Shown piece after piece: positions 2,221 to 58,051 of a stretch of 64,000 nucleotides of DNA (position 1 is the stretch's first letter; every line of letters starts with the position of its first letter). Below the pieces are notes generated by a model, which was given only the letters and a program-made list of their open reading frames with translations, did not search any database and had not been told where the DNA came from. The stretch lies in NCBI RefSeq assembly GCF_001194135.2, contig NC_068986.1:6181067-6245066 (forward strand), written 5' to 3'. The DNA comes from Octopus bimaculoides (lineage: Eukaryota). A program made the translations under genes and the position numbers.

Positions 2221-3414
2221 TTAGGTCATCAAGTATGAAATTTGTAGTAAGGTATATTTTGACAATCTTTATTTTTTGTGCTTTATAAAGTATTTATAAA
2301 TCTTTTTTTTGCTATTTTTGTTTAGAGATGGATAAGTCGGAAATTTGTACGGTTTTGAAATATGAGTTCTTTCTTGGAAATACAGCATCACAGACAGCTC
2401 GGAATATTAATGGAGTATTTCATTCTTATGTTATTACACAGCAGATAGTATCAAATTGCTTTGCAAAATTTCATTCTGGTAACTTTGACCTCACAAATGA
2501 GCAACACAATCAACCAGAAGCAAAAGTGAATAATGACAAACTGAAAGCCACTGTCGAGTCAGATCCATCTAAAAGTGCTCATGAATTATCATTGTTGTTT
2601 GGTGTTAGGAAGCAAACAATATTGACTCACCTAGTTCGAATTGGTAAAGTGAAAAAGTTGGATAAGTGGGTTCCACATAAACTCAATGAAAATCAGAAAC
2701 AGCAACATTTGGAAGCCTGCATTATGCTACTTTCTCATCACAAAAATGAATCGTTTTTGACTCGAATTGTAACATGTGATGAGAAATGGATCCAACACAA
2801 CAACCATAAACATTCAGCACAATGGTTGGACAAAGACAAGCCACCAAAACCCAGTCCAAAAAGCAAAATTCATCAAAAGAAGCTGATGTTGTGTGTTTGG
2901 TGGTCTGGCGCAGGTGCGATCCATTATGATTTCATTAAACCTAGCTCATCTGTCACAGCTGAAGTATACTGCAGCCAACTGGAGCAAATGATGCAGAAAC
3001 TTACAAAAATCAACCTAGATCAGTCAACAGATCCACTCCTATTTTATTGCAAGACAACGCCATATTACACAATACAAAAATGACATTGGCGAAACTACAA
3101 GAGTTGTAGTTGGAAGTTCTCCATCATCTCACCTGATCTTGTTCCCACTGACTACCACTTCTTCCAGAATTTGGATAATTTTTTGATAGGAAAAATATTT
3201 AATTCCGATGATTCTGTAAAACAGGCCTTCCAAGATTTTACTGATTCTAGATTGCCAGGCTTTTACAGTTCTGGGATGGACAAGCTACCGCTGAAATGGC
3301 AAGTGTATTGACAATATGGGTGCATACTTTGATGAATAAAACTATTCATTGTGCTTATAAAACATTAGCAAACTTTTTTTTTCTTTTCTATAAATTTCAT
3401 ACTTGATGACCTAA
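2221..3414 (+). mobile_element. Near-full-length mariner transposon (cecropia/Hsmar1-like)
   Basis: Perfect 23-bp TIRs TTAGGTCATCAAGTATGAAATTT (2221-2243 / 3392-3414), each flanked by TA; encloses a transposase. Confidence 0.95.
2328..3339 (+). pseudogene. Mariner transposase pseudogene (D,D34D)
   Basis: GKVKKLDKWVPHKL, IVTCDEKW, LLQDNA, SPDLVPTDYHFF and C-terminal CIDNMGAYFDE*. Frameshifts near 3030, 3130 and 3300, and an in-frame stop. D34D spacing is recovered if the deleted PPY is restored. Confidence 0.92.
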
Positions 3415-7974: not shown

Positions 7975-9340
7975 TCATCATCATCATCATCATTTAATGT
8001 CTGTTTTCCATGCTGGCATGGGTTGGACAGTTTGACAGGAGATGGTCAGCTGCTGAGCAGTCCAGGTTCCATGTCTGTTTTGACATGGTTTCGACGGCTG
8101 GATGCCCTCCCTAATGTCACCCACTTTACAGAGTGTATTGGGTGCTTTTACATAGCACTGGCATGGATGCTATTGTGTGGCACTAACATGAGTTCTTTTT
8201 ATGTGAGCCCAGCACCCAAGAGCCCACAAGATTAAGAATGCTCAACTGGAGAGGGATGCACTGGGATATGCTCATATGCAAGGATGACCACGTATTTTCT
8301 TAGTTGACATGTCTTCTGAAGCACAGAAAACTGCCAGAAGTCTCAGTTTTCTGTGAGTCACAACATCTGAAGATCCTTTCTCACCACTTCATCCCATGTC
8401 TACCTGGGTGTACTCCTACTACACGTTCCCTTCACATTTAGAGCTCAACACTTCTTAATGCCATTGTCTTCATTCATACGCATTACATGACTGTACCAAT
8501 GCAGTCTTCTCTCTTGAAAACTACATCTGCTTTTCTCTCAAATCACTTACACTCTGTCGTATATGCACACTGACATTAGCCATCCACTAGAACATACTGA
8601 ATGCATTTCTTTCAAGCCTTCGCGTGTCCTCAGCAATCACAGCCCATGTTTCATTGCCATGTAGTATAACTGTTTGTACATAGACATCATACAATCTGCC
8701 TTTACTAGCAGAGGTAGCAGCTCTCTGAACTTTGCCCTGCCTCTTATTCTAGTGGCTATGCTTTTGGAACAACCTCTGCCACAGCTAACTTGGTCATCTA
8801 AGTAACAGAAACTGCCTACTACTTCTAAGGATCACCCACTGACATTTGACAGAGTCTATATTTTGTACATTCCTGCTGTTTAATGTACCTGCACATCTTC
8901 CACATCAAAGACTACTTTCTCAGTTAGTCTTCCCGTGATACTGCTGCACCTCTTATGTGTTAATAGCTTGCACTCGGTACATCTTATGCAGTTTCTCTCA
9001 ACACCTTTTCTACATATCAAGCAGGGCCATCTCCTTGAAAGGAACTGTGGATTGTCTGTTTTCCGACTTCTAGGTCTTTGGTTTTTGCTAAATTAATTCT
9101 AAGGCCCTTTGATTCCAGGCTCTGCTGCCATACCTGAAATTTCTTCTCTAGTTCTGGTAGTGATTCAGTAAAACAAACACAGTCATCAGCATAGAGGAGT
9201 TCCCAAATGCAGCCAATATTAAATTTCTCTGTTATAACTTGGAGGAATATGATAAACAAAAGTGGGGCTGAGAACTGATCCCTGATGGACTCCTAGTTGT
9301 ACATTAAATTCCTTGCTATACTCATTGGTATACTCCCTTG
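7975..9340 (-). mobile_element. 5'-truncated RTE LINE with RT core, PHD-like finger, 3' UTR and (GAT)n tail
   Basis: GVHQGSVLSP, ELLYADD, GLRINLAKTK, WPCLICRKGVERNCIRCTECKLLTHKRC...CGRC, then the RT C-terminus, 3' UTR and (CAT)n on + at 7975-7993. Confidence 0.9.
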
Positions 9341-19140: not shown

Positions 19141-19547
19141 TACTCTTTTACTCTTTTACTTGCTTCAGTCATTTGACTGCGGCCATGCTGGAGCACCACC
19201 TTAAGTCGAGCAAATCGACCCTAGGACTTATTCTTTGTAAGCCTAGTACTTATTCTATCAATCACTTTTGCCGAATTGCTAGATTACAGGGACGTAAACA
19301 CACCAGCATCGGTTATCAAGCGATGTTGGGGGGACAAACACAGACATGCAAACACACATATACATATACATATACATATATATACGACGGACTTCTTTCA
19401 GTTTCCGTCTACCAAATCCACTCACAAGGCTTTGGTCGGCCCAAGATTATAGTAGAAGACACTTACCCAAGCTGCCATGCAGTGGGACTGAACCAGGAAC
19501 CATGTGGTTGGTAAGCAAGCTACTTACCACACAGCCACTCCTGCGCC
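19141..19547 (-). mobile_element. SINE family A, full-length copy
   Basis: On minus: GGCGCAGGAGTGGCTGTGTGGTAAGTAGCTTGCTTACCAACCACATGGTTCC head, internal (TA/TG) tract, tail ending in (AAAAGAGT)n. Confidence 0.9.
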
Positions 19548-20344: not shown

Positions 20345-20497
20345 GGCGTGGGAGTGGCTGTGTGGTAAGTAGCTTGCTTACGAACCACATGGTTCCGTGT
20401 TCAGTCCCACCGCATGACACCTTGAGCAAGAGTCATCTACTATAGCCTCGGGCCAACCAAAGCCTTGTGAGTGGATTTGGTAGACAGAAACTGAAAC

Positions 20498-20590
<93 letters not shown>

Positions 20591-20963
20591 TGTTTGTGTG
20601 TCTGTGTGTGTGTGTGTGTGTCTGTCTGTGTGTCTGTGTTTTTGTGTGTCTGTGTTTGTCCCCCTGACATCGCTTGACAACCGATGCTGGTGTGTTTACG
20701 TCCCCGTAACTTAGTTAAGTTAGGGGTACATAAACACACTAACATTGGTTGTCAAGTGATCGTAGGGGGACAAACACACACACACACACACACATGTACG
20801 ACGGGCTTCTTTCAGTTTCCATCTACCAAATCCACTCACAAGGATTTGGTCGATCTGAGGCTATAGTAGAAGATACTTGCCCAAGGTGCAACACAGTGAG
20901 ACTGAACCTGGAACCATGTGGTTGGTAAGCAAGCTACTTACCACACAGCCATGCCTGCACCTA
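20345..20963. mobile_element. Two SINE A copies fused tail-to-tail (+ 20345-20712, - 20713-20963)
   Basis: Both copies truncated at about the same internal TAACTTAG position. Confidence 0.85.
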
Positions 20964-22924: not shown

Positions 22925-23290
22925 TGCTTCCCAACCACATGGTTGTGGATTCAGTCCCACTGCGTGGCACCTTGGATAAGTGTCTTCTACTATAGCCTCA
23001 GGCCAACCAAAGCTTTGTGAGTGGATTTGGCAGACGGAAACTGAAAGAAGTTTGTCGTATATATAACTATATATATANNNNNNNNNNGGCGCAATGGCCC
23101 AGTGGTTAGGGCAGCGAACTTGCGGTCAGAGGATTGTGGTTCCGATTTCCAGACTAGGTGTTGTGTGTGTTTATTGAGCGAAACACCTAAGGCTCCATGA
23201 GGCTCCGGCAGCGGGTGGTGGCGACCCCTGTTGTACTCTTTTGCCCCAACTTTCTCTCACTATTTCTTCCTGTTTCTTGAGTAAAGCTGT
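22925..23290 (+). mobile_element. SINE A head followed, after a 10-N gap, by SINE B
   Basis: A head 22925-23075; B starts GGCGCAATGGCCCAGTGG at 23088. Confidence 0.8.
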
Positions 23291-25925: not shown

Positions 25926-25956
25926 AAAAAAATTGTCCAGCAGCATTTGTGGTATG

Positions 25957-25997
25957 GCTAGATGCATGTTTCTGCCTCTCTGCACTTCATCAGTAGC
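25957..25997 (-). ncRNA. Minimal type-I hammerhead motif
   Basis: Minus: gcta-CTGATGA-agtgcagagaggca-GAAA-catgca-TC-tagc. Stem I gcta/tagc, stem II tgc/gca, AUC triplet. Confidence 0.6.
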
Positions 25998-35636: not shown

Positions 35637-36939
35637 CTTTCAAACATGAAACCCCCAAATTTATGGAGGCAAATCGGAAGAAGATGCAAGCAGTTTTTCA
35701 GAAGAGAAATAAATCAGAAGAAAAGATGAGAATCAAAGTAATTTCTTTCCTCCTCCTCCTCCTCCTCCTCCTGATCATCATCACCATGATTATGATGATG
35801 ATCCTCCTCCTCTTCATCCTCTTCCTCCTCTATGATCACGATCATAGTCATGATTATCATCACCACCACCACCACCACCACTCTCACCATCACCACTCTC
35901 ACCACCACCACCACCACCACCACCATTATTGTTTTCATTATTATTACAGTTGTCATGACATTTATATTACTTTTGCCATTCCATGCATATTTAGAGATAG
36001 ATCAATGGTGGTTACTTGTTCTTCATCAGCCATGACACATCATCAACTTGTACTGTTGCCTTCATGTTGTAACATTATAACTGAAAATAAAGTGGTGAGC
36101 TGGCAGAATTGTTACTCTGCCAGGCTAAATTTTCAGTGGCATTTCATTTTATGATCTGAGTTCAAATTCTGCCAAGGTCAACTTTGTCTTTTATCCTTTC
36201 ATGGCTGATAAAAGAAATACTAGTCGAACATTAGTGTTGCTGTAATTGACATATCTCATCTCCCAAAATTGCCTGGTCTTGTACAAAAAATTTGAAACCA
36301 ATATTATTATTGAACATCCATCCCTCCACCCATCCACCCATCCATCCACCCATCCATCCACCCATCCATCCATCCATACATACATACACCCCCTCCCCCA
36401 CAGAATTGGTAAAAATTCTGAAGCCTGAATTTTTGTTTTTGGCTCAAATGTCAATGTGTTGGCCGAATGCTATTTTTCTGNNNNNNNNNNNNNNNNNNNN
36501 NNNNNNNNNNNNNNNNNNNNNNNNNNNNNNNNNNNNNNNNNNNNNNNNNNNNNNNNNNNNNNNNNNNNNNNNNNNNNNNNNNNNNNNNNNNNNNNNNNNN
36601 NNNNNNNNNNNNNNNNNNNNNNNNNNNNNNNNNNNNNNNNNNNNNNNNNNNNNNNNNNNNNNNNNNNNNNNNNNNNNNNNNNNNNNNNNNNNNNNNNNNN
36701 NNNNNNNNNNNNNNNNNNNNNNNNNNNNNNNNNNNNNNNNNNNNNNNNNNNNNNNNNNNNNNNNNNNNNNNNNNNNNNNNNNNNNNNNNNNNNNNNNNNN
36801 NNNNNNNNNNNNNNNNNNNNNNNNNNNNNNNNNNNNNNNNNNNNNNNNNNNNNNNNNNGTGTGTTAGGGTTAAGTGGAGGATTAAGTTCATTCTGTGGTC
36901 CTTTTTTAGCAGGGGAATGTTTTGAAGGATGGTGTCGAA

Positions 36940-37165
36940 GGCTTCATTGTTAAGAGGGTTGTGTGTGGAGATGTATGGTAGGGCTTTTGGTTGTAAATTA
37001 AACAAAAGATTCGATGGGCACAGATATGACGTTAGACGTAATAACAGTAGTTTGACAGAACTTGCTGAACGTTTTACATCAGACGGCTGCAATTTTGAAA
37101 AAGACTTGGAAGTGCATATTCTCAGAAAATATTTTGAATCTGCTACACTTCAGCTAATTGGTGTT
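36940..37165 (+). mobile_element. Penelope-like GIY-YIG endonuclease fragment
   Basis: KLNKRFDGHRYDVRRNNSSLTELAERFTSDGCNFEKDLEVHIL. Confidence 0.65.
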
Positions 37166-37392
37166 CTGACTTTCATTCACATTATCTCATTATCTTTCTC
37201 TTCATGGGTGGCTTTATATTATGATTATTGCTTAAGTTCTACAGTGTTTCTACAACAGACTGGAGAGCATCAATTTGTTTCATCTTTTTCTTGCAACGTT
37301 GGTCTTTCATGAGGATTTTCCATTCTGTTTCTCAGTTTTGTGTCACACATTTTTGTGCAGGCTGTAGCAGCAGCATAGCATAACTTATTTAA

Positions 37393-39041: not shown

Positions 39042-41060
39042 GTTGCAGTCTAACATTGGATTGTTATAACGTCCATTATGGTATAGCAGTATAGTTAGTT
39101 AGGCAAGTAAAGACACAACTATGACCGACTTTGCCAACCTCTCGACTTCCTACATCACAGTATATGTAACAATTATCACATACCACTCATCATGTGAGAG
39201 GAGTGTTCCATTATTATTACCCCTATAACATCTCCCTTTTTAAATTTTTTTTCTTCAGGAGTGTAATTTTCTTTTTATTAACAATAATTTTTACATCACC
39301 CCACCTCCCTTTTTTTTTTGAGTTTTTTTTTCATACAGTTACAAATTTAATATTTTCTCATTTAGCATCCACTTTCAGGAACTCCATACATTTTTTTTTC
39401 TTTTGCTTGTGTATACTATATAATAGCTAATATAGTTAGCTAATATGACCTTTGTGTATTGTAGTGTTATTCGAAATTTTAGAGCCAGTGACTAAATTAT
39501 TTAGATATTTTCTCTATAAATAAGACTAGAGACTGCAGATTATTAAATATGTATGTACTATATGGGGTCAGAATCTAGCTAGGTGAAAGTAAACTGAATA
39601 ATTAAGTGGTTGGGGGTAAGTCCAGGAGTTGTGAGTTCAATGCCTGAATAGTGGCAGGCGGGATCAGATGAGGGAATTACCAATGAGAAAAGATCATGAA
39701 GTGATTAGAAATTAAAAATGGGGACTTAAGGCTTATTGTATTTAAAGGTTTTAATCAGTTTATGCATACAAGTTGGTTTGAATTCTGATCTTTTATTAAC
39801 TAGTTTGTCCTTCTCAGAGAATCTAATGATTTTCAATTGTTCTAAGGAACATAACTGGCAACCAGTTCTATTATTTTTATAAATCACTGCCAATCAAACT
39901 ATGGACCATCTAAGGTTAAAGTTAATATTTTCGTCTTTAAGTTCCCATATTCTACATGACAATGAAGTGCTATTAGTCTTATGCCTGAGTCTAAATGATG
40001 ACCTATGATTATAGAACCTAGATTTCCAGAAGGATGAGCAACCAGGGTAGGTGAGAGTATTTGCTTCCGTAATTATTTCACAAGAGTAGACTATGTTCTT
40101 TGCTAGGCAGTTTCCACGCAAAGGACATGTTGTTGTTGTTACACAATTGCACCCAAATTTATAATTGCCAGGCCGTCTAATGCTTGCATGTGGAGGGTAG
40201 CTGTTTATAGAATTGCTATCTTAGTTACTTCTAGGGTAATTAGAGTTTACGCCTACACTGTTGTTACTATTACTGTTATTACCTCTATTGGAGTTGTTCA
40301 AAGTTTCACTATCTCTATTCTTTCCGCCGTTAATACTGGTGCTATATCTATTAGCCTTATCAATATTATTGTTAATTATATTGGAATTGTGACTAGTATA
40401 GTTATTGCCATAATTACTGTTTGAGGTGAAACTGGTTATTCTATTAGTAGTAGCAGTATCGTTATTTAACGTCGAAGTACTATAGAGTGTGCCACTATTC
40501 TGTGTTGGGTCTTGATTTAATGATTCATCTAGTGAACTGTGATTTGATATTTGGATAGGGTTATAGGGCCTAATAATGTTGTTGTCATTACAATTATCAT
40601 TATTACTACCATTATCAACAATTTTATTATTCTCAGGATTATTAATTTGGATACTATCATTATTAGTTCTTGGATTATTGGGGTTAGACTGATTATTATT
40701 GTTTGTTCTTAATCTAGCTTTTTTTTTTATTTTGGTTTTATTATGTTTAGATATATACCGTAAAATTCACACAAAAACTTTTGTGAGTTTCATAACTCCT
40801 TGTAAGTTTAATTCTTGTGAGTTTGTTAATTTCTTGTGAGTTCCTTAATTTCTTGTCACCACTGCTGTAATCCAATGTTGGATTGTTATAACGTCCATTC
40901 TGGTATAGCAGTATAGCTAGTTAGACAAGTAAAGACACAACTCTCTATGACCGACTTCACCAACTTCTTGACTTCCTACATCAGTATTTGTAATGACTAG
41001 CACATACTGCTCATCATGTAGGAGGGGTGTTACATTATTATTATTATTATCCCCATAACA
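39042..41060 (+). repeat. About 190-bp diverged direct repeats (39042-39230 and 40864-41060)
   Basis: TTGGATTGTTATAACGTCCATT...GTAAAGACACAACT...GACTTCCTACATC...CTCATCATGT shared. Confidence 0.85.
39740..40760 (-). mobile_element. Penelope-like element: Asn-rich linker plus GIY-YIG endonuclease
   Basis: CNCVTTTTCPLRGNCLAKNIVYSC...FWKSRFYNHRSSFR...STSLSCRIWELKDENINFNLRWSIV...CQLCSLEQ...LVNKRSEF. Confidence 0.85.
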
Positions 41061-41949: not shown

Positions 41950-42265
41950 CTTTTACTCTTTTACTTGTTTCAGTCATTTGACTGTGGCCATGCTGGAGCA
42001 CCGCCTTTAGTCGAGCAAATCGACCCCAGGACTTAGTCTTTGTAAGCCTAGTACTTATTCTATCAGTCTCTTTTGCTGAATCGCTAAGTTACGGGGACAT
42101 AAACACACCAGCATCGGTTGTCAAGCAATGCTAGGGGGANNNNNNNNNNAAGGCTTTGGTTGGCCCGAGGCTATAGTAGAAGACACTTGCCCAAGATGCC
42201 ACGCAGTGGGACTAAACCCGGAACCATGTGGCTGGTAAGCAAGCTACTTACCACACAGCCATGCC
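41950..42265 (-). mobile_element. SINE family A copy
   Basis: Matches 19141-19547; internal microsatellite replaced by a 10-N gap. Confidence 0.88.
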
Positions 42266-42638
42266 TGCACCTTCACATTCTGAGTTCAATTCCAGTTAAG
42301 ATCAATTTTGCTTTTCATCCTTTTGTGGTTGATTAAATAAAGCATCAATCAAGTACTGGGGCCAGTGTAATTGACTTACCTCTTCTCATCAAAATTGCTG
42401 CCCTTGTGCCAACACTAGAAAGAATCATTATTCTTTTCTACTTTAGGCACAAGGCCTGAAATTTTGGGGGAAGGGGCCAGTCGATTAGATCGACCCAGTA
42501 TGCAACTGGTACTTAATTTATCAACCCCGAAAGGATGAAAAGCAAAGTCAACCTCAGTGGAATTTGAACTCAGAATGTAAAGACAGATGAAATACCACTA
42601 ATGCTATGATAATGATGGTTATGACAACGACAACGACT

Positions 42639-49849: not shown

Positions 49850-50118
49850 TTGACATTGCTATGTTTATTTTGCAAGTTGTGAAATTTGTGTTTTTGTGAT
49901 CACGTGTATGCTGTAGTCTGTGATTTTGTCATGGACAGGAACAAAGAGCCAACATAAAATTTTGCGTTAAACTTGGGAAGTCTGCTACAGAAACATTGAG
50001 CATGCTTCAGCAAGCTTACAGTGATGAGGCAATGGGTTGTATGCAATATTTCAAGTGGTACGGGTACTTCAAAAGCAGAAGAATGTCCCTGGAAGATGAA
50101 GAGCAATCTGGAAGACCT
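49850..50118 (+). mobile_element. 5' fragment of an irritans-type mariner transposase
   Basis: From ~49931: ANIKFCVKLGKSATETLSMLQQAYSDEAMG...KW..YFKS.R.SLEDEEQSGRP. Confidence 0.8.
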
Positions 50119-50149
50119 GTGAAGAGGTGCTGAGAGACAAAAAAGTTTC

Positions 50150-50495
50150 AAAGACACACACACACAAGACAGACTTCTTTCAGCTTTCATTTACCAAGTC
50201 CTCTCACAAGGCTTTGGTTGGCCCGAGGCTTTAGAAGAAGACACTTGCCAAAGGTGTCACTCAGGGGTACTAAACCCAGAACTATGTGGTTGGAGAGTAA
50301 ACATCTCACCACACAGTCATATATATACATGAAGGGCTTCTTTCAGTTTCCCTCTGGTAAATCCACTCACAACTCTCTGGTCAACTTGGGACTATAGCAG
50401 AAGACACATACTCAAGGTGCCACTCAATGGGAATGAACCTGAAACCAGTGGTTGAGAAGTAAACTTCTTAACCACACAGCCACACCTGCACCTGT
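50150..50495 (-). mobile_element. Two tandem SINE A heads
   Basis: 50150-50320 and 50330-50495. Confidence 0.8.
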
Positions 50496-51306: not shown

Positions 51307-51839
51307 CTGATTTCAAAAATAGTAAATAAAGAAAGAAATAGTTGGAGAAAGGGAAGAATTTTCTCCAATACTGATATTTTATTTATTGACCTTGAAAGAT
51401 TAAAAGGCAAAACTGACTTTGGTGGAATTTGAACTTGTGCACAGAGCTGGAATGGTTACTGCAAAGCAATCTATTTGATACTCTAACAAACCTGCCAAGT
51501 AGAATGAGGGGCAAGAAAGGAGTATAACTATGAGAAAGAAGGGGCCAAAACAGAAAAGGGTTTTTGTTGTAGTGGAGCTACATTATCTTATTCTTTTACT
51601 CTTTTACTTGTTTCAGGTTTTTGACTGCGGCCATGCTGGAGCACTACTTTAAAGGATTTTTTAGTCAGAGAAATTGACCTGCCATGCAGTGGGACTGAAC
51701 CAGAAACATGTAGTTGGGAAGTAAGCTTCTTACCACACAGCCACACATGCTCCAATGACTACTCATATTTTAAAAGAGAGGGTGGAAGTGACCAAATGGA
51801 GCTGAAAAGCAATAAAAAAGAAGTATTAATGGGTAGACC

Positions 51840-51993: not shown

Positions 51994-52150
51994 CAACAGG
52001 TTTCTTTCAGTTTCTATCTACCAAATCCACTCACTAGGCTTTGGTCGACTTCAGGCTATAGTAGAAGACACTTGCCCAAGGTGCCATGCAGTGAGACTGA
52101 GCCCTGAACCATGTGGTTGGGAGGTAAGTGTCTTACTACTTAGCCACACT
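51840..52150 (-). mobile_element. SINE family A copy
   Basis: Matches 19141-19547. Confidence 0.85.
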
Positions 52151-53605: not shown

Positions 53606-54459
53606 AAAACACAGAATTTTAATCAGTACTTCAATAGCATTTTGTTTCTAATCATTGCCATGACAATTCTATTGTATAACACTTACATTATTCATCAGCT
53701 TGCTCTCTGTATACTTTCATTTCTTAATGAATATTCATGTATTTTCCATGCTAGACTGAATAGTTTTGCAAACTCATATATTTGGAAGAACAGTTACGAA
53801 TAGATTGGAGGTTTAAGGTTGGATATATCTTCTTTGTGTTAAAAATCCTTGTTTTCAGTGAAATCATGGGAATTTAGGTTAGTAGTTCAACTATTTAATT
53901 ACTTAGCTACTGTATTTCTGTACATATTGATTTCTTAGACAAGCACAATGACTCAGATTAATTAAAAGCAAGAGCAATGGGATGTTATGACCCACATCCA
54001 TTCTCCATGAACAACTGTGGTTTAAGGAAAATGAATTAGCCTTGTTTCTTTATTTTATTCTACTTTTTATTTTTTACCTGCAGCTGTCAACTTGTAAAGT
54101 ATTCAAGAACATTAATGGCATCTATCTCTTACCAATCTTGAAGAACTTATGAAAGCAGTGAGCACAGTTTCTTCCTCCAGACCATGTGAATGATAAAAGA
54201 CAACCAACAGAAACAAAACTAAGAACAGACATAGACGTGTGGTTCAGAAGCTTGCTGCGCAATCATATGTTTTCAGGTTCAGTTCTGCTGTATGGCAGCT
54301 TGGCCAGATGTCTTCTACTATAGCCCAACAACCAATACCTTGATAGTAAATTTCAGTACAATTGACAAATATTTTTAGGTTCTGCATTGACTATAAAGAG
54401 AACAGGAGTGTGAACTTCTTTCCAGTGCGACAAACTTCTTCAACCAACTGGTGAGCTAC

Positions 54460-54502
54460 TTCAGGCTGATGACGAGCAAAGACTCAGAAACATGTCCCTG
54501 AA
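54460..54502 (+). ncRNA. Minimal type-I hammerhead ribozyme motif with GUC cleavage site
   Basis: ttcagg-CTGATGA-cgagcaaagactca-GAAA-catg-TC-cctgaa. Perfect 6-bp stem I, gag/ctc stem II, palindromic stem III ACATGT. Confidence 0.8.
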
Positions 54503-54751
54503 TGCTGGCTAGGCTGGGTGGAGGAGTTTGTCTCCCCCTCGCAAACTTAAGGACACAGTAATTGTGTCAAGGCCGACAGGAAGCGGTCCAGCTTCCTAGA
54601 GCTAAACGGCAGTAGTGTATTCCCTTCTTGAGATTGTCACATTAAGTTGACAATATACTACAATGTTATCGCACCACTACTGCTTAAATCTCTCTGAGAG
54701 ATTTAGAAATATGATATTTCTAATTTATATATATATATATATATATAAATA

Positions 54752-55598
54752 CAGGGTGCGATGGGTAAATTGTTGCCATCTTATATTTTAAACTTCACGT
54801 ATGTGTATCGTTTGTATTTGATTTTGTCAACTACACAGCATAGTATGGTCAGTTGGGCACTGTTTGTGAGAAATCCAGCACCATGACACAATTCACTCTG
54901 CCAGAAATTTGGAAACAACATGCTGTACTGCTTGGCATTCATGCCAGAAACTCCAATACGAGCATTTCAGAGTGTTTGGGTGTCAATTTAAAAACAGTGC
55001 AATCTGAGGACATGTACTGAGAGTGATAAAAAACAAACATCCAGTCAACATCATGGTGTTTGAAGTGATCAGTAGTGATGGCAATCTTATGCCTCCATTC
55101 ATCTTCCCACATGGCCTCAGACTCAACATGGAGGCCTACATCAAGTGCCTGGAAGAGGTAGTGCTGCCCTGGGTCAAGAGGGTGACAGGTGGAAGACCTT
55201 ATGTCTGGCAACAGGACTCTGCACCATGCCACATAAGCAGGAGAACCAAATCATGGCTGTCATACAATTTCACTTCACCCCTAATATCTGGTCACCTCAC
55301 ACCCCAGACCGCAATCCCCTTGATTATTATGTGTGGGGTGCAGTTGAGCATGAGACCAACAAAATTCACTGTAACATCAAAGATGAACTGAAGGCAAAGA
55401 TTATGGCAGCATTCACCAACTTAAACAAGTCATGTGGAGGCCATGGTTGAAGCCAATGGCGATTTTATTGAATAAGTTTACTCTTTAGTATTTTAAGAAA
55501 TTCTTATGTAAGTTTGGTAAACATATCTGTTAAAATGAGATGTCAGTGTTATTTTCATTTTTGTGTAATTCTGATGACAGCTTATTCGCCGCACACTG
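54752..55598 (+). mobile_element. Internally deleted maT-like (DD37D-type) Tc1/mariner element
   Basis: TA-flanked imperfect TIRs CAGGGTGCGATGG / CGCCGCACACTG; N-terminus MTQFTLPEIWKQHAVLLG (54883) joined to VWQQDSAPCH...WSPHTPDRNPLDYYVWG. Confidence 0.75.
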
Positions 55599-55611
55599 TA
55601 TATATATATAT

Positions 55612-55669
<58 letters not shown>

Positions 55670-55830
55670 GGCTGCTTGGTAAGTAGCTTGCTTACCAACC
55701 ACATGGTTCCGGGTTCAGTCTCACTACGTGGTACCTTGGGCAAGTGTCTTCTACTATAGCCTCGGGCCGACCAAAGCCTTGTGAGTGGATTTGGTAGATG
55801 GAAACTGAAAGAAGCCCGTCATATATATGT
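55670..55830 (+). mobile_element. SINE A head (well conserved)
   Basis: GGTAAGTAGCTTGCTTACCAACCACATGGTTCCGGGTTCAGT...GGAAACTGAAAGAAGCCCGTC. Confidence 0.88.
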
Positions 55831-56464
55831 ATATGTATATATATATANNNNNNNNNNNNNNNNNNNNNNNNNNNNNNNNNNNNNNNNNNNNNNNNNNNNN
55901 NNNNNNNNNNNNNNNNNNNNNNNNNNNNNNNNNNNNNNNNNNNNNNNNNNNNNNNNNNNNNNNNNNNNNNNNNNNNNNNNNNNNNNNNNNNNNNNNNNNN
56001 NNNNNNNNNNNNNNNNNNNNNNNNNNNNNNNNNNNNNNNNNNNNNNNNNNNNNNNNNNNNNNNNNNNNNNNNNNNNNNNNNNNNNNNNNNNNNNNNNNNN
56101 NNNNNNNNNNNNNNNNNNNNNNNNNNNNNNNNNNNNNNNNNNNNNNNNNNNNNNNNNNNNNNNNNNNNNNATATTCACCTTTATATATTTATATATTTAA
56201 TCCTTTATATTGAACACTCAATATTTCATCTATTCAATAAGACATATTCCATATATTCAATAAGACATTCAATACTTTATTTCATAGTACCGTCCATTTT
56301 TATTTTATATTATATATTGTATATTATATTATATATTGTATATTCCATATTCTATATCCCACATTGGTTTTGCAGGAATATAAATAAAACATAAAAAACA
56401 GACAGTGTTGGAACTCTTTTAAACAAAATAATATATATATATATATATATATACATTCATATAT

Positions 56465-56979: not shown

Positions 56980-58004
56980 NNNNNNNNNNNNNNNNNNNNN
57001 NNNNNNNNNNNNNNNNNNNNNNNNNNNNNNNNNNNNNNNNNNNNNNNNNNNNNNNNNNNNNNNNNNNNNNNNNNNNNNNNNNNNNNNNNNNNNNNNNNNN
57101 NNNNNNNNNNNNNNNNNNNNNNNNNNNNNNNNNNNNNNNNNNNNNNNNNNNNNNNNNNNNNNNNNNNNNNNNNNNNNNNNNNNNNNNNNNNNNNNNNNNN
57201 NNNNNNNNNNNNNNNNNNNNNNNNNNNNNNNNNNNNNNNNNNNNNNNNNNNNNNNNNNNNNNNNNNNNNNNNNNNNNNNNNNNNNNNNNNNNNNNNNNNN
57301 NNNNNNNNNNNNNNNNNNNNNNNNNNNNNNNNNNNNNNNNNNNNNNNNNNNNNNNNNNNNNNNNNNNNNNNNNNNNNNNNNNNNNNNNNNNNNNNNNNNN
57401 NNNNNNNNNNNNNNNNNNNNNNNNNNNNNNNNNNNNNNNNNNNNNNNNNNNNNNNNNNNNNNNNNNNNNNNNNNNNNNNNNNNNNNNNNNNNNNNNNNNN
57501 NNNNNNNNNNNNNNNNNNNNNNNNNNNNNNNNNNNNNNNNNNNNNNNNNNNNNNNNNNNNNNNNNNNNNNNNNNNNNNNNNNNNNNNNNNNNNNNNNNNN
57601 NNNNNNNNNNNNNNNNNNNNNNNNNNNNNNNNNNNNNNNNNNNNNNNNNNNNNNNNNNNNNNNNNNNNNNNNNNNNNNNNNNNNNNNNNNNNNNNNNNNN
57701 NNNNNNNNNNNNNNNNNNNNNNNNNNNNNNNNNNNNNNNNNNNNNNNNNNNNNNNNNNNNNNNNNNNNNNNNNNNNNNNNNNNNNNNNNNNNNNNNNNNN
57801 NNNNNNNNNNNNNNNNNNNNNNNNNNNNNNNNNNNNNNNNNNNNNNNNNNNNNNNNNNNNNNNNNNNNNNNNNNNNNNNNNNNNNNNNNNNNNNNNNNNN
57901 NNNNNNNNNNNNNNNNNNNNNNNNNNNNNNNNNNNNNNNNNNNNNNNNTGGCAATATACTACACTTTATCGTGCAGTTACTGTTAATACTTCATTTAGAG
58001 AATT

Positions 58005-58051
<47 letters not shown>

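What the first reader, a model, noticed from the sequence alone, without database searches (positions are those of the whole stretch)
54380..54722. Intact hammerhead heading a ~300-nt, hairpin-saturated module (candidate retrozyme or circular-RNA element)
Seen: a canonical core at 54460-54502 (6-bp stem I, GUC site, palindromic ACATGT stem III). Around it nearly every base sits in a stem: ccagt/actgg (54422/54447), agtttg/caaact (54525/54542), gacaca/tgtgtc (54552/54563), aggaagc/gcttcct (54578/54591), gcagtagtg/cactactgc (54609/54675) enclosing attgtca/tgacaat, and two overlapping terminal palindromes TAAATCTCTC-T-GAGAGATTTA and TAGAAATAT-G-ATATTTCTA. It is more GC/CpG-rich than its flanks and has no ORF. 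Known: metazoan non-LTR retrozymes are small non-coding monomers with type-I hammerheads that give circular RNAs, and Penelope pLTRs carry similar motifs. Inference: this may be a non-autonomous self-cleaving structured-RNA element of an undescribed family.
Basis: partly seen in the sequence, partly recalled or inferred. Interest (0 to 1): 0.85.

Follow-up and report, generated by a model that had tools for sequence, protein, structure and literature searches.

The report
Solo hammerhead ribozyme relic, octopus DNA
A real but slightly damaged copy of the hammerhead self-cutting RNA motif sits at the tip of a long hairpin inside a single ~340-base non-coding insert in octopus repeat-rich DNA. 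It is most likely a dead, single copy of a known kind of ribozyme-carrying mobile element, not a working or new system.

Summary
The motif is at the stated coordinates and is not chance. All 13 core bases are present, with a 6-bp helix I, a GUC cleavage site and a palindromic ACAUGU helix III. My descriptor hit the window once and 300 shuffles never. Rfam HH9 scores it 27.3 bits, below the gathering score of 52. "Intact" overstates it: helix II has three Watson-Crick pairs and a C·A mismatch at 10.1/11.1. The listed hairpins exist. The plus-strand fold beats shuffles (z -4.7; minus strand -1.8), but 7% of random stretches of this window fold as well. The architecture is the canonical metazoan type I hammerhead, which cleaves as a dimer. 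The module lies between an old SINE-like fragment and a (TA)n tract later split by a DNA transposon. It is a single unit with no tandem copy, no target duplication and no Penelope RT/EN coding sequence in 64 kb. I found no copy in 50 kb of Octopus vulgaris. Best reading: a decayed solo monomer of a retrozyme or Penelope-derived non-autonomous element, a new member of a known kind. Family size and activity remain untested.

The parts
54380..54428 (+). 5' part of the module. It folds as an imperfect hairpin (54384-54428). The left boundary is approximate, because it abuts the point where homology to the SINE-like repeat ends.
   Evidence: MFE structure. SINE homology ends near 54378.
54429..54459 (+). 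5' strand of the distal extension of helix I: 14 + 3 + 5 + 3 bp. It ends in the unpaired UAC (54457-54459), which forms the helix I internal loop (loop 1 position).
   Evidence: rod z -5.1. inverted repeat I1. The Rfam HH9 alignment covers this stem and loop.
54460..54465 (+). Helix I proximal stem, 5' strand (UUCAGG). It pairs with 54497-54502.
   Evidence: Direct reading. Descriptor hit.
54466..54472 (+). Conserved core box CUGAUGA (C3-A9).
54473..54486 (+). Helix II and loop 2: C | GAG | CAAAGA | CUC | A. There are three Watson-Crick pairs, and the pair next to the core (54473 C with 54486 A) is a mismatch.
   Evidence: The non-standard pair is flagged in the Rfam alignment. The same loop, CAAAGA, occurs in an independent real type I hammerhead (L002).
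54487..54496 (+). Core GAA (G12-A14). Helix III is A15.1-U16.1 closing a palindromic CAUG (ACAUGU), the dimer-type helix III. C17 is at 54496. The predicted cleavage is between 54496 and 54497.
   Evidence: Architecture as described for canonical metazoan type I ribozymes (PMC4209133, PMC7229834).
54497..54532 (+). 3' strand of helix I: the proximal CCUGAA plus the distal extension. The rod has 31 bp in all, 4 of them G.U.
54552..54597 (+). Two short hairpins: GACACA/UGUGUC (54552-54568) and AGGAAGC/GCUUCCU (54578-54597).
54608..54684 (+). Long hairpin closed by GGCAGUAGUG/CACUACUGCU, enclosing AUUGUCA/UGACAAU.
   Evidence: I16.
54685..54723 (+). Two adjacent 10-bp terminal hairpins, TAAATCTCTC-T-GAGAGATTTA and TTAGAAATAT-G-ATATTTCTAA, at the 3' end of the module.
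   Evidence: I7, I8..
54726..54751 (.). (TA)13 microsatellite abutting the 3' end of the module. It is a tail or an insertion target, and it continues at 55599-55669 beyond a later transposon insertion.
54226..54378 (+). Context: an old fragment of the window's abundant SINE-like repeat. Its homology stops exactly where intact copies carry their internal microsatellite.
   Evidence: The same repeat occurs in Octopus vulgaris locus L004.
54752..55598 (+). Context: a later insertion in the TA tract, probably an internally deleted Tc1/mariner-type DNA transposon. It has TA flanks, CAG(G/T)GTGCG termini and transposase-like ORF remnants.
   Evidence: Pfam found no domain, so the class is my own reading.
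57949..58005 (+). Tentative second, diverged copy of the last ~57 nt of the module. It lies just after an assembly gap and is also followed by (TA)n.
   Evidence: blastn E 0.07 without the TA tail. Local alignment score 33, against a maximum of 25 in 3,656 random 60-mers. nhmmer finds nothing.

Best explanation
The module (about 54380-54723, + strand) is a solitary, decayed genomic copy of a small non-coding retroelement. The element carries a canonical metazoan type I hammerhead ribozyme, so it belongs to the non-LTR retrozyme or Penelope-derived non-autonomous lineage.

In the RNA, the 37 nt before the core and the 36 nt after the cleavage site pair into a 31-bp helix I, with a UAC/U internal loop six pairs from the core. 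This presents the CUGAUGA...GAA core, a short helix II with a CAAAGA loop, and a one-pair helix III capped by palindromic CAUG. A helix III of this type is too weak in a monomer. Two ribozymes, from neighbouring tandem units or from two transcripts, pair ACAUGU with ACAUGU to form a 6-bp helix III, and each then cuts after C54496.

In an active tandem array, two cuts would release a unit of about 340 nt. Its ends would be held together by the long helix I for ligation into a circle, and a Penelope-type RT would copy that circle in trans.

What is shown: the motif, its significance, the strand-specific fold, the absence of coding capacity, and the single-copy context.

What is inferred: dimer-dependent cleavage, circularisation, mobilisation in trans, and insertion into the (TA)n tract of an older SINE-like repeat.

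This particular copy is probably inactive. It has a C.A mismatch at the base of helix II and no partner unit.
For: Motif:
- The core, helix I, the GUC site and palindromic helix III are all present.
- The descriptor gives 1 hit in the window and 0 in 300 shuffles. It gives none in 50 kb of Octopus vulgaris and recovers the positive control.
- Rfam HH9 scores 27.3 bits over the full model, including the distal helix I and internal loop.
- The dimensions match the published definition of canonical metazoan type I ribozymes: helix I 6 bp, helix II 4 positions, helix III 1-2 bp with a small palindromic loop, acting as dimers (PMC4209133). They also match the axolotl HHR_Amex1 description (PMC7229834).
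- An independent real hammerhead (L002; Hammerhead_1 33.3 bits against gathering 34) has the same 3 bp / UAC-versus-U / 6 bp geometry and the same CAAAGA loop, with different helix sequences.

Fold:
- Strand-specific structure: z -4.7 on +, -1.8 on -.
- The rod has z -5.1.

Element features:
- Size (~343 nt), lack of ORF and GC of 44% fit the 170-400-nt, <45-50% GC retrozyme units (PMC7229834).
- Dispersed monomers are a known state of retrozyme families (bioRxiv 10.64898/2026.07.22.740005).
- The module starts exactly where the flanking SINE-like repeat normally has its microsatellite, and it ends at (TA)n. (TA)n is a reported preferred target of several Penelope clades (PMC8557442).
Against: - No second unambiguous copy was found in 64 kb, nor in 50 kb of Octopus vulgaris. 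Repeat-family status is therefore not demonstrated.
- There is no tandem arrangement and no target-site duplication.
- There is no Penelope RT/EN in the window.
- The score is below the Rfam gathering thresholds.
- The 10.1/11.1 pair, normally a highly conserved G-C (PMC4209133), is C.A here.
- (TA)n tracts are so common in this window that adjacency to one is weak evidence.
- Folding as good as this occurs in about 7% of random stretches of the window.
Confidence: 0.55

Rival explanations
1. It is the 3' non-coding tail (pLTR part) of a 5'-truncated autonomous Penelope-like element. The ribozyme is the one such elements carry near their 3' ends, and the copy was truncated during insertion, just upstream of the ribozyme hairpin.
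For: Penelope-like elements carry hammerheads in their terminal repeats and near their 3' ends. Most genomic motifs are single and belong to truncated copies (PMC4209133, PMC8557442). (TA)n is a preferred target for some clades (PMC8557442), and the module ends at (TA)n.
Against: Metazoan Penelope min-hammerheads are described with helix II of 7-8 bp, helix I of 4-5 bp and a poorly defined loop 1 (PMC4209133). This motif has the canonical 6-bp helix I, a 4-position helix II and the canonical loops. No RT or GIY-YIG remnant was found by tblastn with Poseidon_Ac anywhere in the window at E<=10, and none is seen in the 2.7 kb upstream.
Confidence: 0.2
2. The hammerhead-like string is a chance combination inside an otherwise unremarkable, hairpin-rich piece of unique intergenic DNA.
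For: It is below Rfam gathering scores. Helix II is imperfect. No family members were found. The window is full of sequences that fold well.
Against: There were 0 hits in 300 shuffles of the whole window and 0 in 50 kb of real octopus DNA with the same descriptor. The Rfam E-value is 1.6e-5 locally. Features not required by my descriptor also match real hammerheads: the UAC internal loop six pairs from the core, the CAAAGA loop 2, and the distal helix I.
Confidence: 0.1
3. The upstream SINE-like head (54226-54378) and the module are one composite element: a SINE whose body carries a hammerhead. This would resemble the architecture I recall for the Schistosoma Sm-alpha SINE-like elements.
For: The two parts are directly adjacent and on the same strand. 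The precedent, a SINE-like element with a pol III-type head and a hammerhead, comes from my own knowledge of Ferbeyre et al. 1998. 'SINE' is a keyword of PMC4209133.
Against: At least five other copies of the SINE-like repeat in the window continue into a microsatellite and a different second half, never into this module. The junction falls exactly at the position of that microsatellite, as expected for an insertion. ARAGORN sees no tRNA-like gene in the head.
Confidence: 0.08
4. It is a host-domesticated ribozyme with a cis-regulatory role in a transcript, like the conserved intronic HH9/HH10 ribozymes of amniotes.
For: The best Rfam match is the HH9 model.
Against: The match is far below HH9's gathering score (27.3 against 52). 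The surroundings are repeats and microsatellites with no recognisable host exon. Helix II is damaged, and helix III is of the weak dimer type rather than the stable helix III aligned in the HH9 model.
Confidence: 0.03

Closest known systems
Canonical metazoan type I hammerhead ribozymes (Rfam RF00163 Hammerhead_1 and RF02275 HH9; newt, schistosome and axolotl HHR_Amex1 type)
   Same: All conserved core bases are present. Helix I is 6 bp, followed by an internal loop. Helix II has four positions and a 6-nt loop of the CAAAxA type (Rfam consensus CAAAUA or CAAAAA; CAAAGA here). Helix III is one pair plus a palindromic tetraloop, which implies action as a dimer. The site is GUC. (PMC4209133; PMC7229834.)
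   Different: The 10.1/11.1 pair is C.A instead of the conserved G-C. Scores are below both gathering thresholds. Helix I is extended to 31 bp. Cleavage has not been tested.
Non-LTR retrozymes of animals (Cervera and de la Pena 2020)
   Same: A small (~340 nt) non-coding unit of moderate to low GC, carrying one type I hammerhead, with a highly base-paired predicted RNA. Dispersed monomers are known for such families.
   Different: The defining tandem arrangement is absent here. Circular RNA, family copies and expression could not be examined. No cephalopod example turned up in the literature I could search.
Hammerheads of Penelope-like elements (min-HHRs in pLTRs)
   Same: A type I hammerhead with dimer-type helix III in a retroelement context, adjacent to a (TA)n tract. 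It has an unpaired base after A9 if the C at 54473 is read as a bulge, which then gives a G10.1-C11.1 pair.
   Different: The helix dimensions are canonical (6/4) rather than min-HHR (4-5/7-8). That reading leaves an extra unpaired A before G12. No RT-GIY-YIG ORF and no second flanking repeat are present.
Metagenome contig Ga0209678_1074477 (locus L002)
   Same: Identical non-helical layout: 3 bp, UAC, 6 bp, CUGAUGA, 4 bp, CAAAGA, 4 bp, GAA, palindromic helix III, H, 6 bp, U, 3 bp. The helix sequences differ.
   Different: L002 has a perfect G10.1-C11.1 helix II, an 8-nt palindromic helix III and a 1,434-nt unit. There is no sequence similarity outside the ribozyme.

Membership tests
Hammerhead ribozyme, type I | Conserved core: C3 U4 G5 A6 N7 G8 A9, G12 A13 A14, A15.1-U16.1, H17 | tested here: met
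   CUGAUGA at 54466-54472, GAA at 54487-54489, A54490...U54495, C54496 (descriptor).
Hammerhead ribozyme, type I | Helix I open, formed by the flanking strands; helices II and III closed | tested here: met
   UUCAGG/CCUGAA plus a distal extension; it forms in the MFE.
Hammerhead ribozyme, type I | Stable helix II starting with the conserved G10.1-C11.1 pair | tested here: not met
   C54473 opposite A54486 is a mismatch, and only GAG/CUC pairs. A G-C pair comes next to the core only if one unpaired base is allowed on each side.
Hammerhead ribozyme, type I | Score at or above the Rfam gathering threshold (RF00163 34 bits; RF02275 52 bits) | tested here: not met
   No gathering match. The best score is 27.3 bits to RF02275.
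Hammerhead ribozyme, type I | Site-specific self-cleavage 3' of H17 | not testable with these tools
   This needs in vitro transcription of monomer and dimer constructs.
Canonical metazoan type I hammerhead (as defined in PMC4209133) | Helix I 6 bp and helix II 4 bp with interacting loops; helix III 1-2 bp capped by a 2-4-nt palindromic loop | tested here: met
   6 bp, then UAC/U loop; four helix II positions (one mismatched) with a CAAAGA loop; A-U plus CAUG. An independent hammerhead, L002, has the same layout. The loop-loop contact itself is inferred.
Non-LTR retrozyme | Head-to-tail tandem repeats of ~150-450 bp, each with a type I hammerhead | tested here: not met
   There is a single unit. 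TRF and self-BLAST find no tandem copy. One hammerhead in the window.
Non-LTR retrozyme | Non-coding unit, GC below about 45-50% | tested here: met
   No ORF above 30 aa inside the module. GC is 0.437.
Non-LTR retrozyme | Multi-copy family in the genome, including dispersed monomers | tested here: inconclusive
   Only two weak candidates in the window: 57949-58005 and 25953-25993. None in 50 kb of Octopus vulgaris. No whole genome was searchable.
Non-LTR retrozyme | Expression as linear and circular RNAs of unit length | not testable with these tools
   No transcriptome could be searched by nucleotide sequence. Exact-protein look-ups of adjacent ORFs found nothing.
Penelope-like element (pLTR with min-HHR) | Ribozyme lies in a repeat flanking an RT plus GIY-YIG ORF | tested here: not met
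   tblastn with Poseidon_Ac found no hit in the window at E<=10. No coding remnant upstream. Sensitivity is limited to Poseidon-like sequences.
Penelope-like element (pLTR with min-HHR) | min-HHR dimensions: helix II 7-8 bp, helix I 4-5 bp, unpaired base between A9 and G10.1 | tested here: not met
   Helix II has 3-4 positions and helix I has 6 bp plus an extension. An unpaired C after A9 is possible, but only together with an extra A before G12.
Penelope-like element (pLTR with min-HHR) | Insertion bias for (TA)n microsatellites (some clades) | tested here: inconclusive
   The module ends at (TA)13 and begins where a SINE-like repeat has its microsatellite. However, TA tracts are frequent throughout the window.

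The most novel reading that the evidence does not exclude
Octopus genomes harbour an undescribed family of ~340-nt hammerhead-bearing non-autonomous elements. Their ribozyme sits at the tip of an unusually long (31-bp) helix I. They insert at (TA)n microsatellites and, in tandem copies elsewhere in the genome, give rise to abundant circular RNAs. This locus would be one dead monomer of that family. It would extend ribozyme-made circular RNAs to cephalopods.
Probability: 0.3. Interest if true: 0.5.

Novelty: new member of a known kind. Interest (0 to 1): 0.3.

Why it matters
Hammerhead-bearing retroelements are a known and widespread source of small circular RNAs in animals. The searchable literature contains no cephalopod example, so this locus is a lead to such a family in octopus genomes. 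On its own it is one damaged copy and changes nothing. The value lies in using it as a query against whole octopus genomes and transcriptomes. That search would show whether a live family exists, whether it depends on Penelope-like elements, and whether the long helix I matters for ligation.

Tried and rejected
1. Rfam scans of the whole window at gathering score, and of 501 nt by E-value, gave no hammerhead. Only an 81-nt scan let the match through the filters.
2. An exact-pattern scan of JGI metagenome contigs for this ribozyme's sequence found 0 hits. A looser pattern found one unrelated real hammerhead and two chance matches in bacterial coding DNA.
3. I tried to reach other octopus DNA.
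   - Three protein searches with window transposon ORFs yielded only two Octopus vulgaris loci, 50 kb in total, with no copy of the module.
   - Exact look-ups of window ORFs found nothing.
4. I looked for a Penelope ORF.
   - Pfam on candidate fragments found only a LINE-type RT and mariner domains.
   - Two fragments that looked GIY-YIG-like to me (36926-37309 +, 39897-40220 -) gave no Pfam hit and no tblastn hit to Poseidon_Ac.
5. A single-sequence covariance model of the ribozyme rod found only microsatellite hairpins elsewhere.
6. MAFFT misaligned the two hammerheads, so no two-sequence model was built.
7. The 'second copy' at 57949 first looked strong (E 2e-10). Most of that score came from the shared TA repeat.
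8. The CUGAUGA-N14-GAAACAUG site at 25953-25993 (-) aligns weakly with the module, but it neither folds nor scores as a hammerhead.
9. Bacterial promoter/terminator and tRNA scans were uninformative.

Full report
**Source of the window.** It is a repeat-rich eukaryotic draft assembly with 13 runs of N, many microsatellites, and transposon ORFs. A mariner ORF at 2328-3083 has its best named relative in Octopus vulgaris, at 80% identity. The window's abundant ~170-bp SINE-like repeat is also present several times in an O. vulgaris chromosome segment (locus L004). I therefore treat the window as octopus DNA. The species was not determined.

**The motif.** On the + strand, 54460-54502 reads UUCAGG CUGAUGA C GAG CAAAGA CUC A GAA ACAUGU C / CCUGAA.
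- This gives every conserved hammerhead core base, a 6-bp helix I, a GUC cleavage triplet with C17 at 54496, and a helix III that is one A-U pair around the palindromic tetraloop CAUG.
- The weak point is helix II. The position next to the core pairs C54473 with A54486, so only GAG/CUC form Watson-Crick pairs. 'Intact' is therefore too strong.

**Is it chance?** I wrote a relaxed type I descriptor. It requires:
- CUGANGA;
- helix II of at least 3 pairs, with one mismatch allowed at its base;
- GAA;
- an A...U helix III that is either a hairpin or a palindrome;
- H17;
- helix I of at least 5 pairs.

It hits the window once, at this site. It hits none of 300 dinucleotide-preserving shuffles of the whole window on both strands. 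It finds nothing in 50 kb of O. vulgaris DNA, and it recovers a positive control.

Rfam gave no match at gathering score and none in a 501-nt E-value scan. The speed filters explain the second result. When only 81 nt were given, the Hammerhead_HH9 model aligned 54451-54519 end to end at 27.3 bits, E 1.6e-5. By my arithmetic that is about 0.01 when scaled to the whole window. The score is below the gathering scores of RF02275 (52 bits) and RF00163 (34 bits). The motif is real, but it is sub-threshold by curated standards.

**Architecture.** Cervera and de la Pena define the canonical metazoan type I hammerhead as follows: helix I of 6 bp and helix II of 4 bp that interact through loop nucleotides, and a helix III of 1-2 bp capped by a small palindromic loop. 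Such a ribozyme is poorly active alone and cleaves as a dimer (PMC4209133). The axolotl HHR_Amex1 ribozyme is described in the same terms, and the weaker HHR_Amex2 has a U.U mismatch at the base of helix II (PMC7229834). The octopus motif fits this definition.

It also has the expected internal loop, UAC opposite U, six pairs from the core, followed by three more pairs. The HH9 model aligns this feature.

A pattern scan of metagenome contigs returned one unrelated, genuine type I hammerhead (L002; Hammerhead_1 33.3 bits against gathering 34). The pattern was TAC-N6-CTGATGA-N4-CAAAGA-N4-GAAAC and did not require any helix. L002 has exactly the same layout: 3 bp, UAC, 6 bp, core, 4 bp, CAAAGA, 4 bp, GAA, palindromic helix III, H17, 6 bp, U, 3 bp. 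Its helix sequences are entirely different. The unpaired parts of the octopus motif are therefore those used by working ribozymes.

By contrast, the min-hammerheads of metazoan Penelope-like elements are described with helix II of 7-8 bp and helix I of 4-5 bp (PMC4209133). That does not fit this motif.

**The surrounding structure.**
- As RNA, 54380-54725 folds to -109.5 kcal/mol, against -85.9 +/- 5 for shuffles (z -4.7). The complementary strand gives z -1.8. The asymmetry comes from G.U pairs: 8 of the 107 pairs.
- The most striking element was not in the finding. The MFE extends helix I into a 31-bp imperfect rod, pairing 54429-54465 with 54497-54532. The ribozyme sits at its tip (-46.0 against -29.1 +/- 3.3; z -5.1).
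- The 3' half (54535-54725) has z -3.7.
- As a control, I folded 110 random 346-nt stretches of the same window. Eight reached the module's z-score, mostly microsatellite or inverted-repeat sequences. 'Hairpin-saturated' is true relative to shuffles, but it is only about the 7th percentile of this genome's local background.
- GC is 0.437 and CpG o/e is 0.43, both somewhat higher than in the flanks.
- There is no ORF.

**Context.**
- Directly upstream, 54226-54378 is an old copy of the SINE-like repeat (74-78% identity to other copies). Its homology ends exactly where intact copies carry an internal microsatellite followed by a different second half.
- The module ends at a (TA)13 tract. That tract is interrupted at a TA by an 847-bp insertion, 54752-55598. 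The insertion has CAG(G/T)GTGCG termini and transposase-like ORF remnants. I read it as a Tc1/mariner-type remnant, although Pfam found no domain.
- The microsatellite resumes at 55599-55669 and is followed by a younger SINE-like copy.
- The simplest history is that the module inserted into the microsatellite of the older repeat. I hold this loosely, because TA tracts are everywhere in this window.
- There is no tandem copy and no target-site duplication.

**Relatives.** Inside the window I found only two weak candidates.
- 57949-58005, just after an assembly gap, resembles the last 57 nt of the module and is also followed by (TA)n. Without the shared TA repeat the evidence is modest: blastn E 0.07, and a local score of 33 against a maximum of 25 in 3,656 random 60-mers. 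nhmmer found nothing.
- 25953-25993 on the - strand has CUGAUGA-N14-GAAACAUG and aligns with 54413-54494 at score 42, against a maximum of 38 in 300 shuffles. It neither folds nor scores as a hammerhead.
- A covariance model of the rod found only microsatellite hairpins elsewhere.

Outside the window, the collections I could search by nucleotide hold no octopus genome. Through protein look-ups I obtained 50 kb of O. vulgaris, which contains the SINE-like repeat but no copy of the module and no hammerhead.

For a link to Penelope-like elements, I took the Poseidon_Ac protein from the supplement of PMC11167929 and ran tblastn. There was no hit in the window at E<=10.

**Mechanism.** The following part is inference from the anatomy and from established hammerhead and retrozyme biology (PMC4209133, PMC7229834).
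- The flanking strands form the long helix I. Two ribozymes pair through ACAUGU to build a 6-bp helix III. Each then cuts after C17, leaving a 2',3'-cyclic phosphate and a 5'-OH.
- In a tandem array this releases a unit-length RNA. Its ends are held by helix I for ligation by a tRNA ligase. The resulting circle would be copied by a Penelope-type RT in trans.
- A 2026 preprint argues that animal retrozymes derive from Penelope terminal repeats, and that dispersed monomers are their immobile offspring (bioRxiv 10.64898/2026.07.22.740005).
- This locus fits the 'monomer offspring' state. It has one unit, a mismatched helix II base pair and unrelated flanks, so it is probably inert.

**Comparison and verdict.**
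- It works like a canonical metazoan type I hammerhead. It does not pass the curated Rfam thresholds or the G10.1-C11.1 criterion.
- It has the size, composition and non-coding nature of a non-LTR retrozyme unit, but it fails the defining tandem arrangement at this locus.
- It fails the tests I could make for a Penelope pLTR.
- No report of hammerheads or retrozymes in cephalopods turned up in the searchable literature.
- I classify it as a new member of a known kind, of modest interest. It is a good query for a genome-wide search, which is the decisive step I could not run.

Noticed in passing
L002 (metagenome contig Ga0209678_1074477), 1-1561; hammerhead at 888-932: The first and last 127 nt of the contig are 100% identical, so it is a 1,434-nt circle or tandem unit. 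It has one near-threshold type I hammerhead (33.3 bits against gathering 34) and no ORF above 96 aa. It may be a retrozyme-like or viroid-like element from an unknown eukaryote.
   Followed up: partly
window 25953-25993 (- strand): A second CUGAUGA-N14-GAAACAUG string has the same spacing as the main motif, a 4-bp helix I, and weak similarity to 54413-54494. It does not fold or score as a hammerhead. It may be a badly decayed relative, or chance.
   Followed up: partly
window 54752-55598: An 847-bp insertion splits the (TA)n tract. It has TA flanks, CAG(G/T)GTGCG termini and transposase-like ORF remnants, so it is probably an internally deleted Tc1/mariner-type element. Pfam found no domain.
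   Followed up: partly
window 19448-19532, 20360-20447, 20859-20957, 22925-22997, 42169-42267, 50386-50477, 51679-51738, 52054-52119, 55670-55847: There are many copies of a SINE-like repeat with an internal (TA/TG)n microsatellite and a distinct second half. New copies often sit next to TA tracts. The same repeat occurs in Octopus vulgaris (L004). ARAGORN does not call its head a tRNA.
   Followed up: partly
window 36926-37309 (+) and 39897-40220 (-): Two ORF fragments have motifs that looked GIY-YIG-like to me (…YGRAFGCKLNKRFDGHRYDV… and …IVYSCEI…YPGCSSFWKSRFYNHRSSF…). They gave no Pfam hit and no similarity to the Poseidon_Ac endonuclease. Their nature is unknown.
   Followed up: partly
window 8640-9292 (- strand): A LINE remnant: an RT fragment (Pfam RVT_1, E 7e-9), followed by a weak, sub-threshold PHD/C1-like zinc-finger match. 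The closest named relatives are hypothetical proteins of Octopus vulgaris and O. bimaculoides.
   Followed up: partly
window 2328-3083 (+) and 49924-50130 (+): Mariner (Mos1-type) transposase remnants. The first has HTH_48 and Transposase_1 domains. The second was judged by eye only.
   Followed up: partly
window 56980-57948: A 969-N assembly gap lies immediately upstream of the tentative second copy of the module's 3' end. The rest of that copy, including any hammerhead, is therefore missing from the assembly.
   Followed up: no
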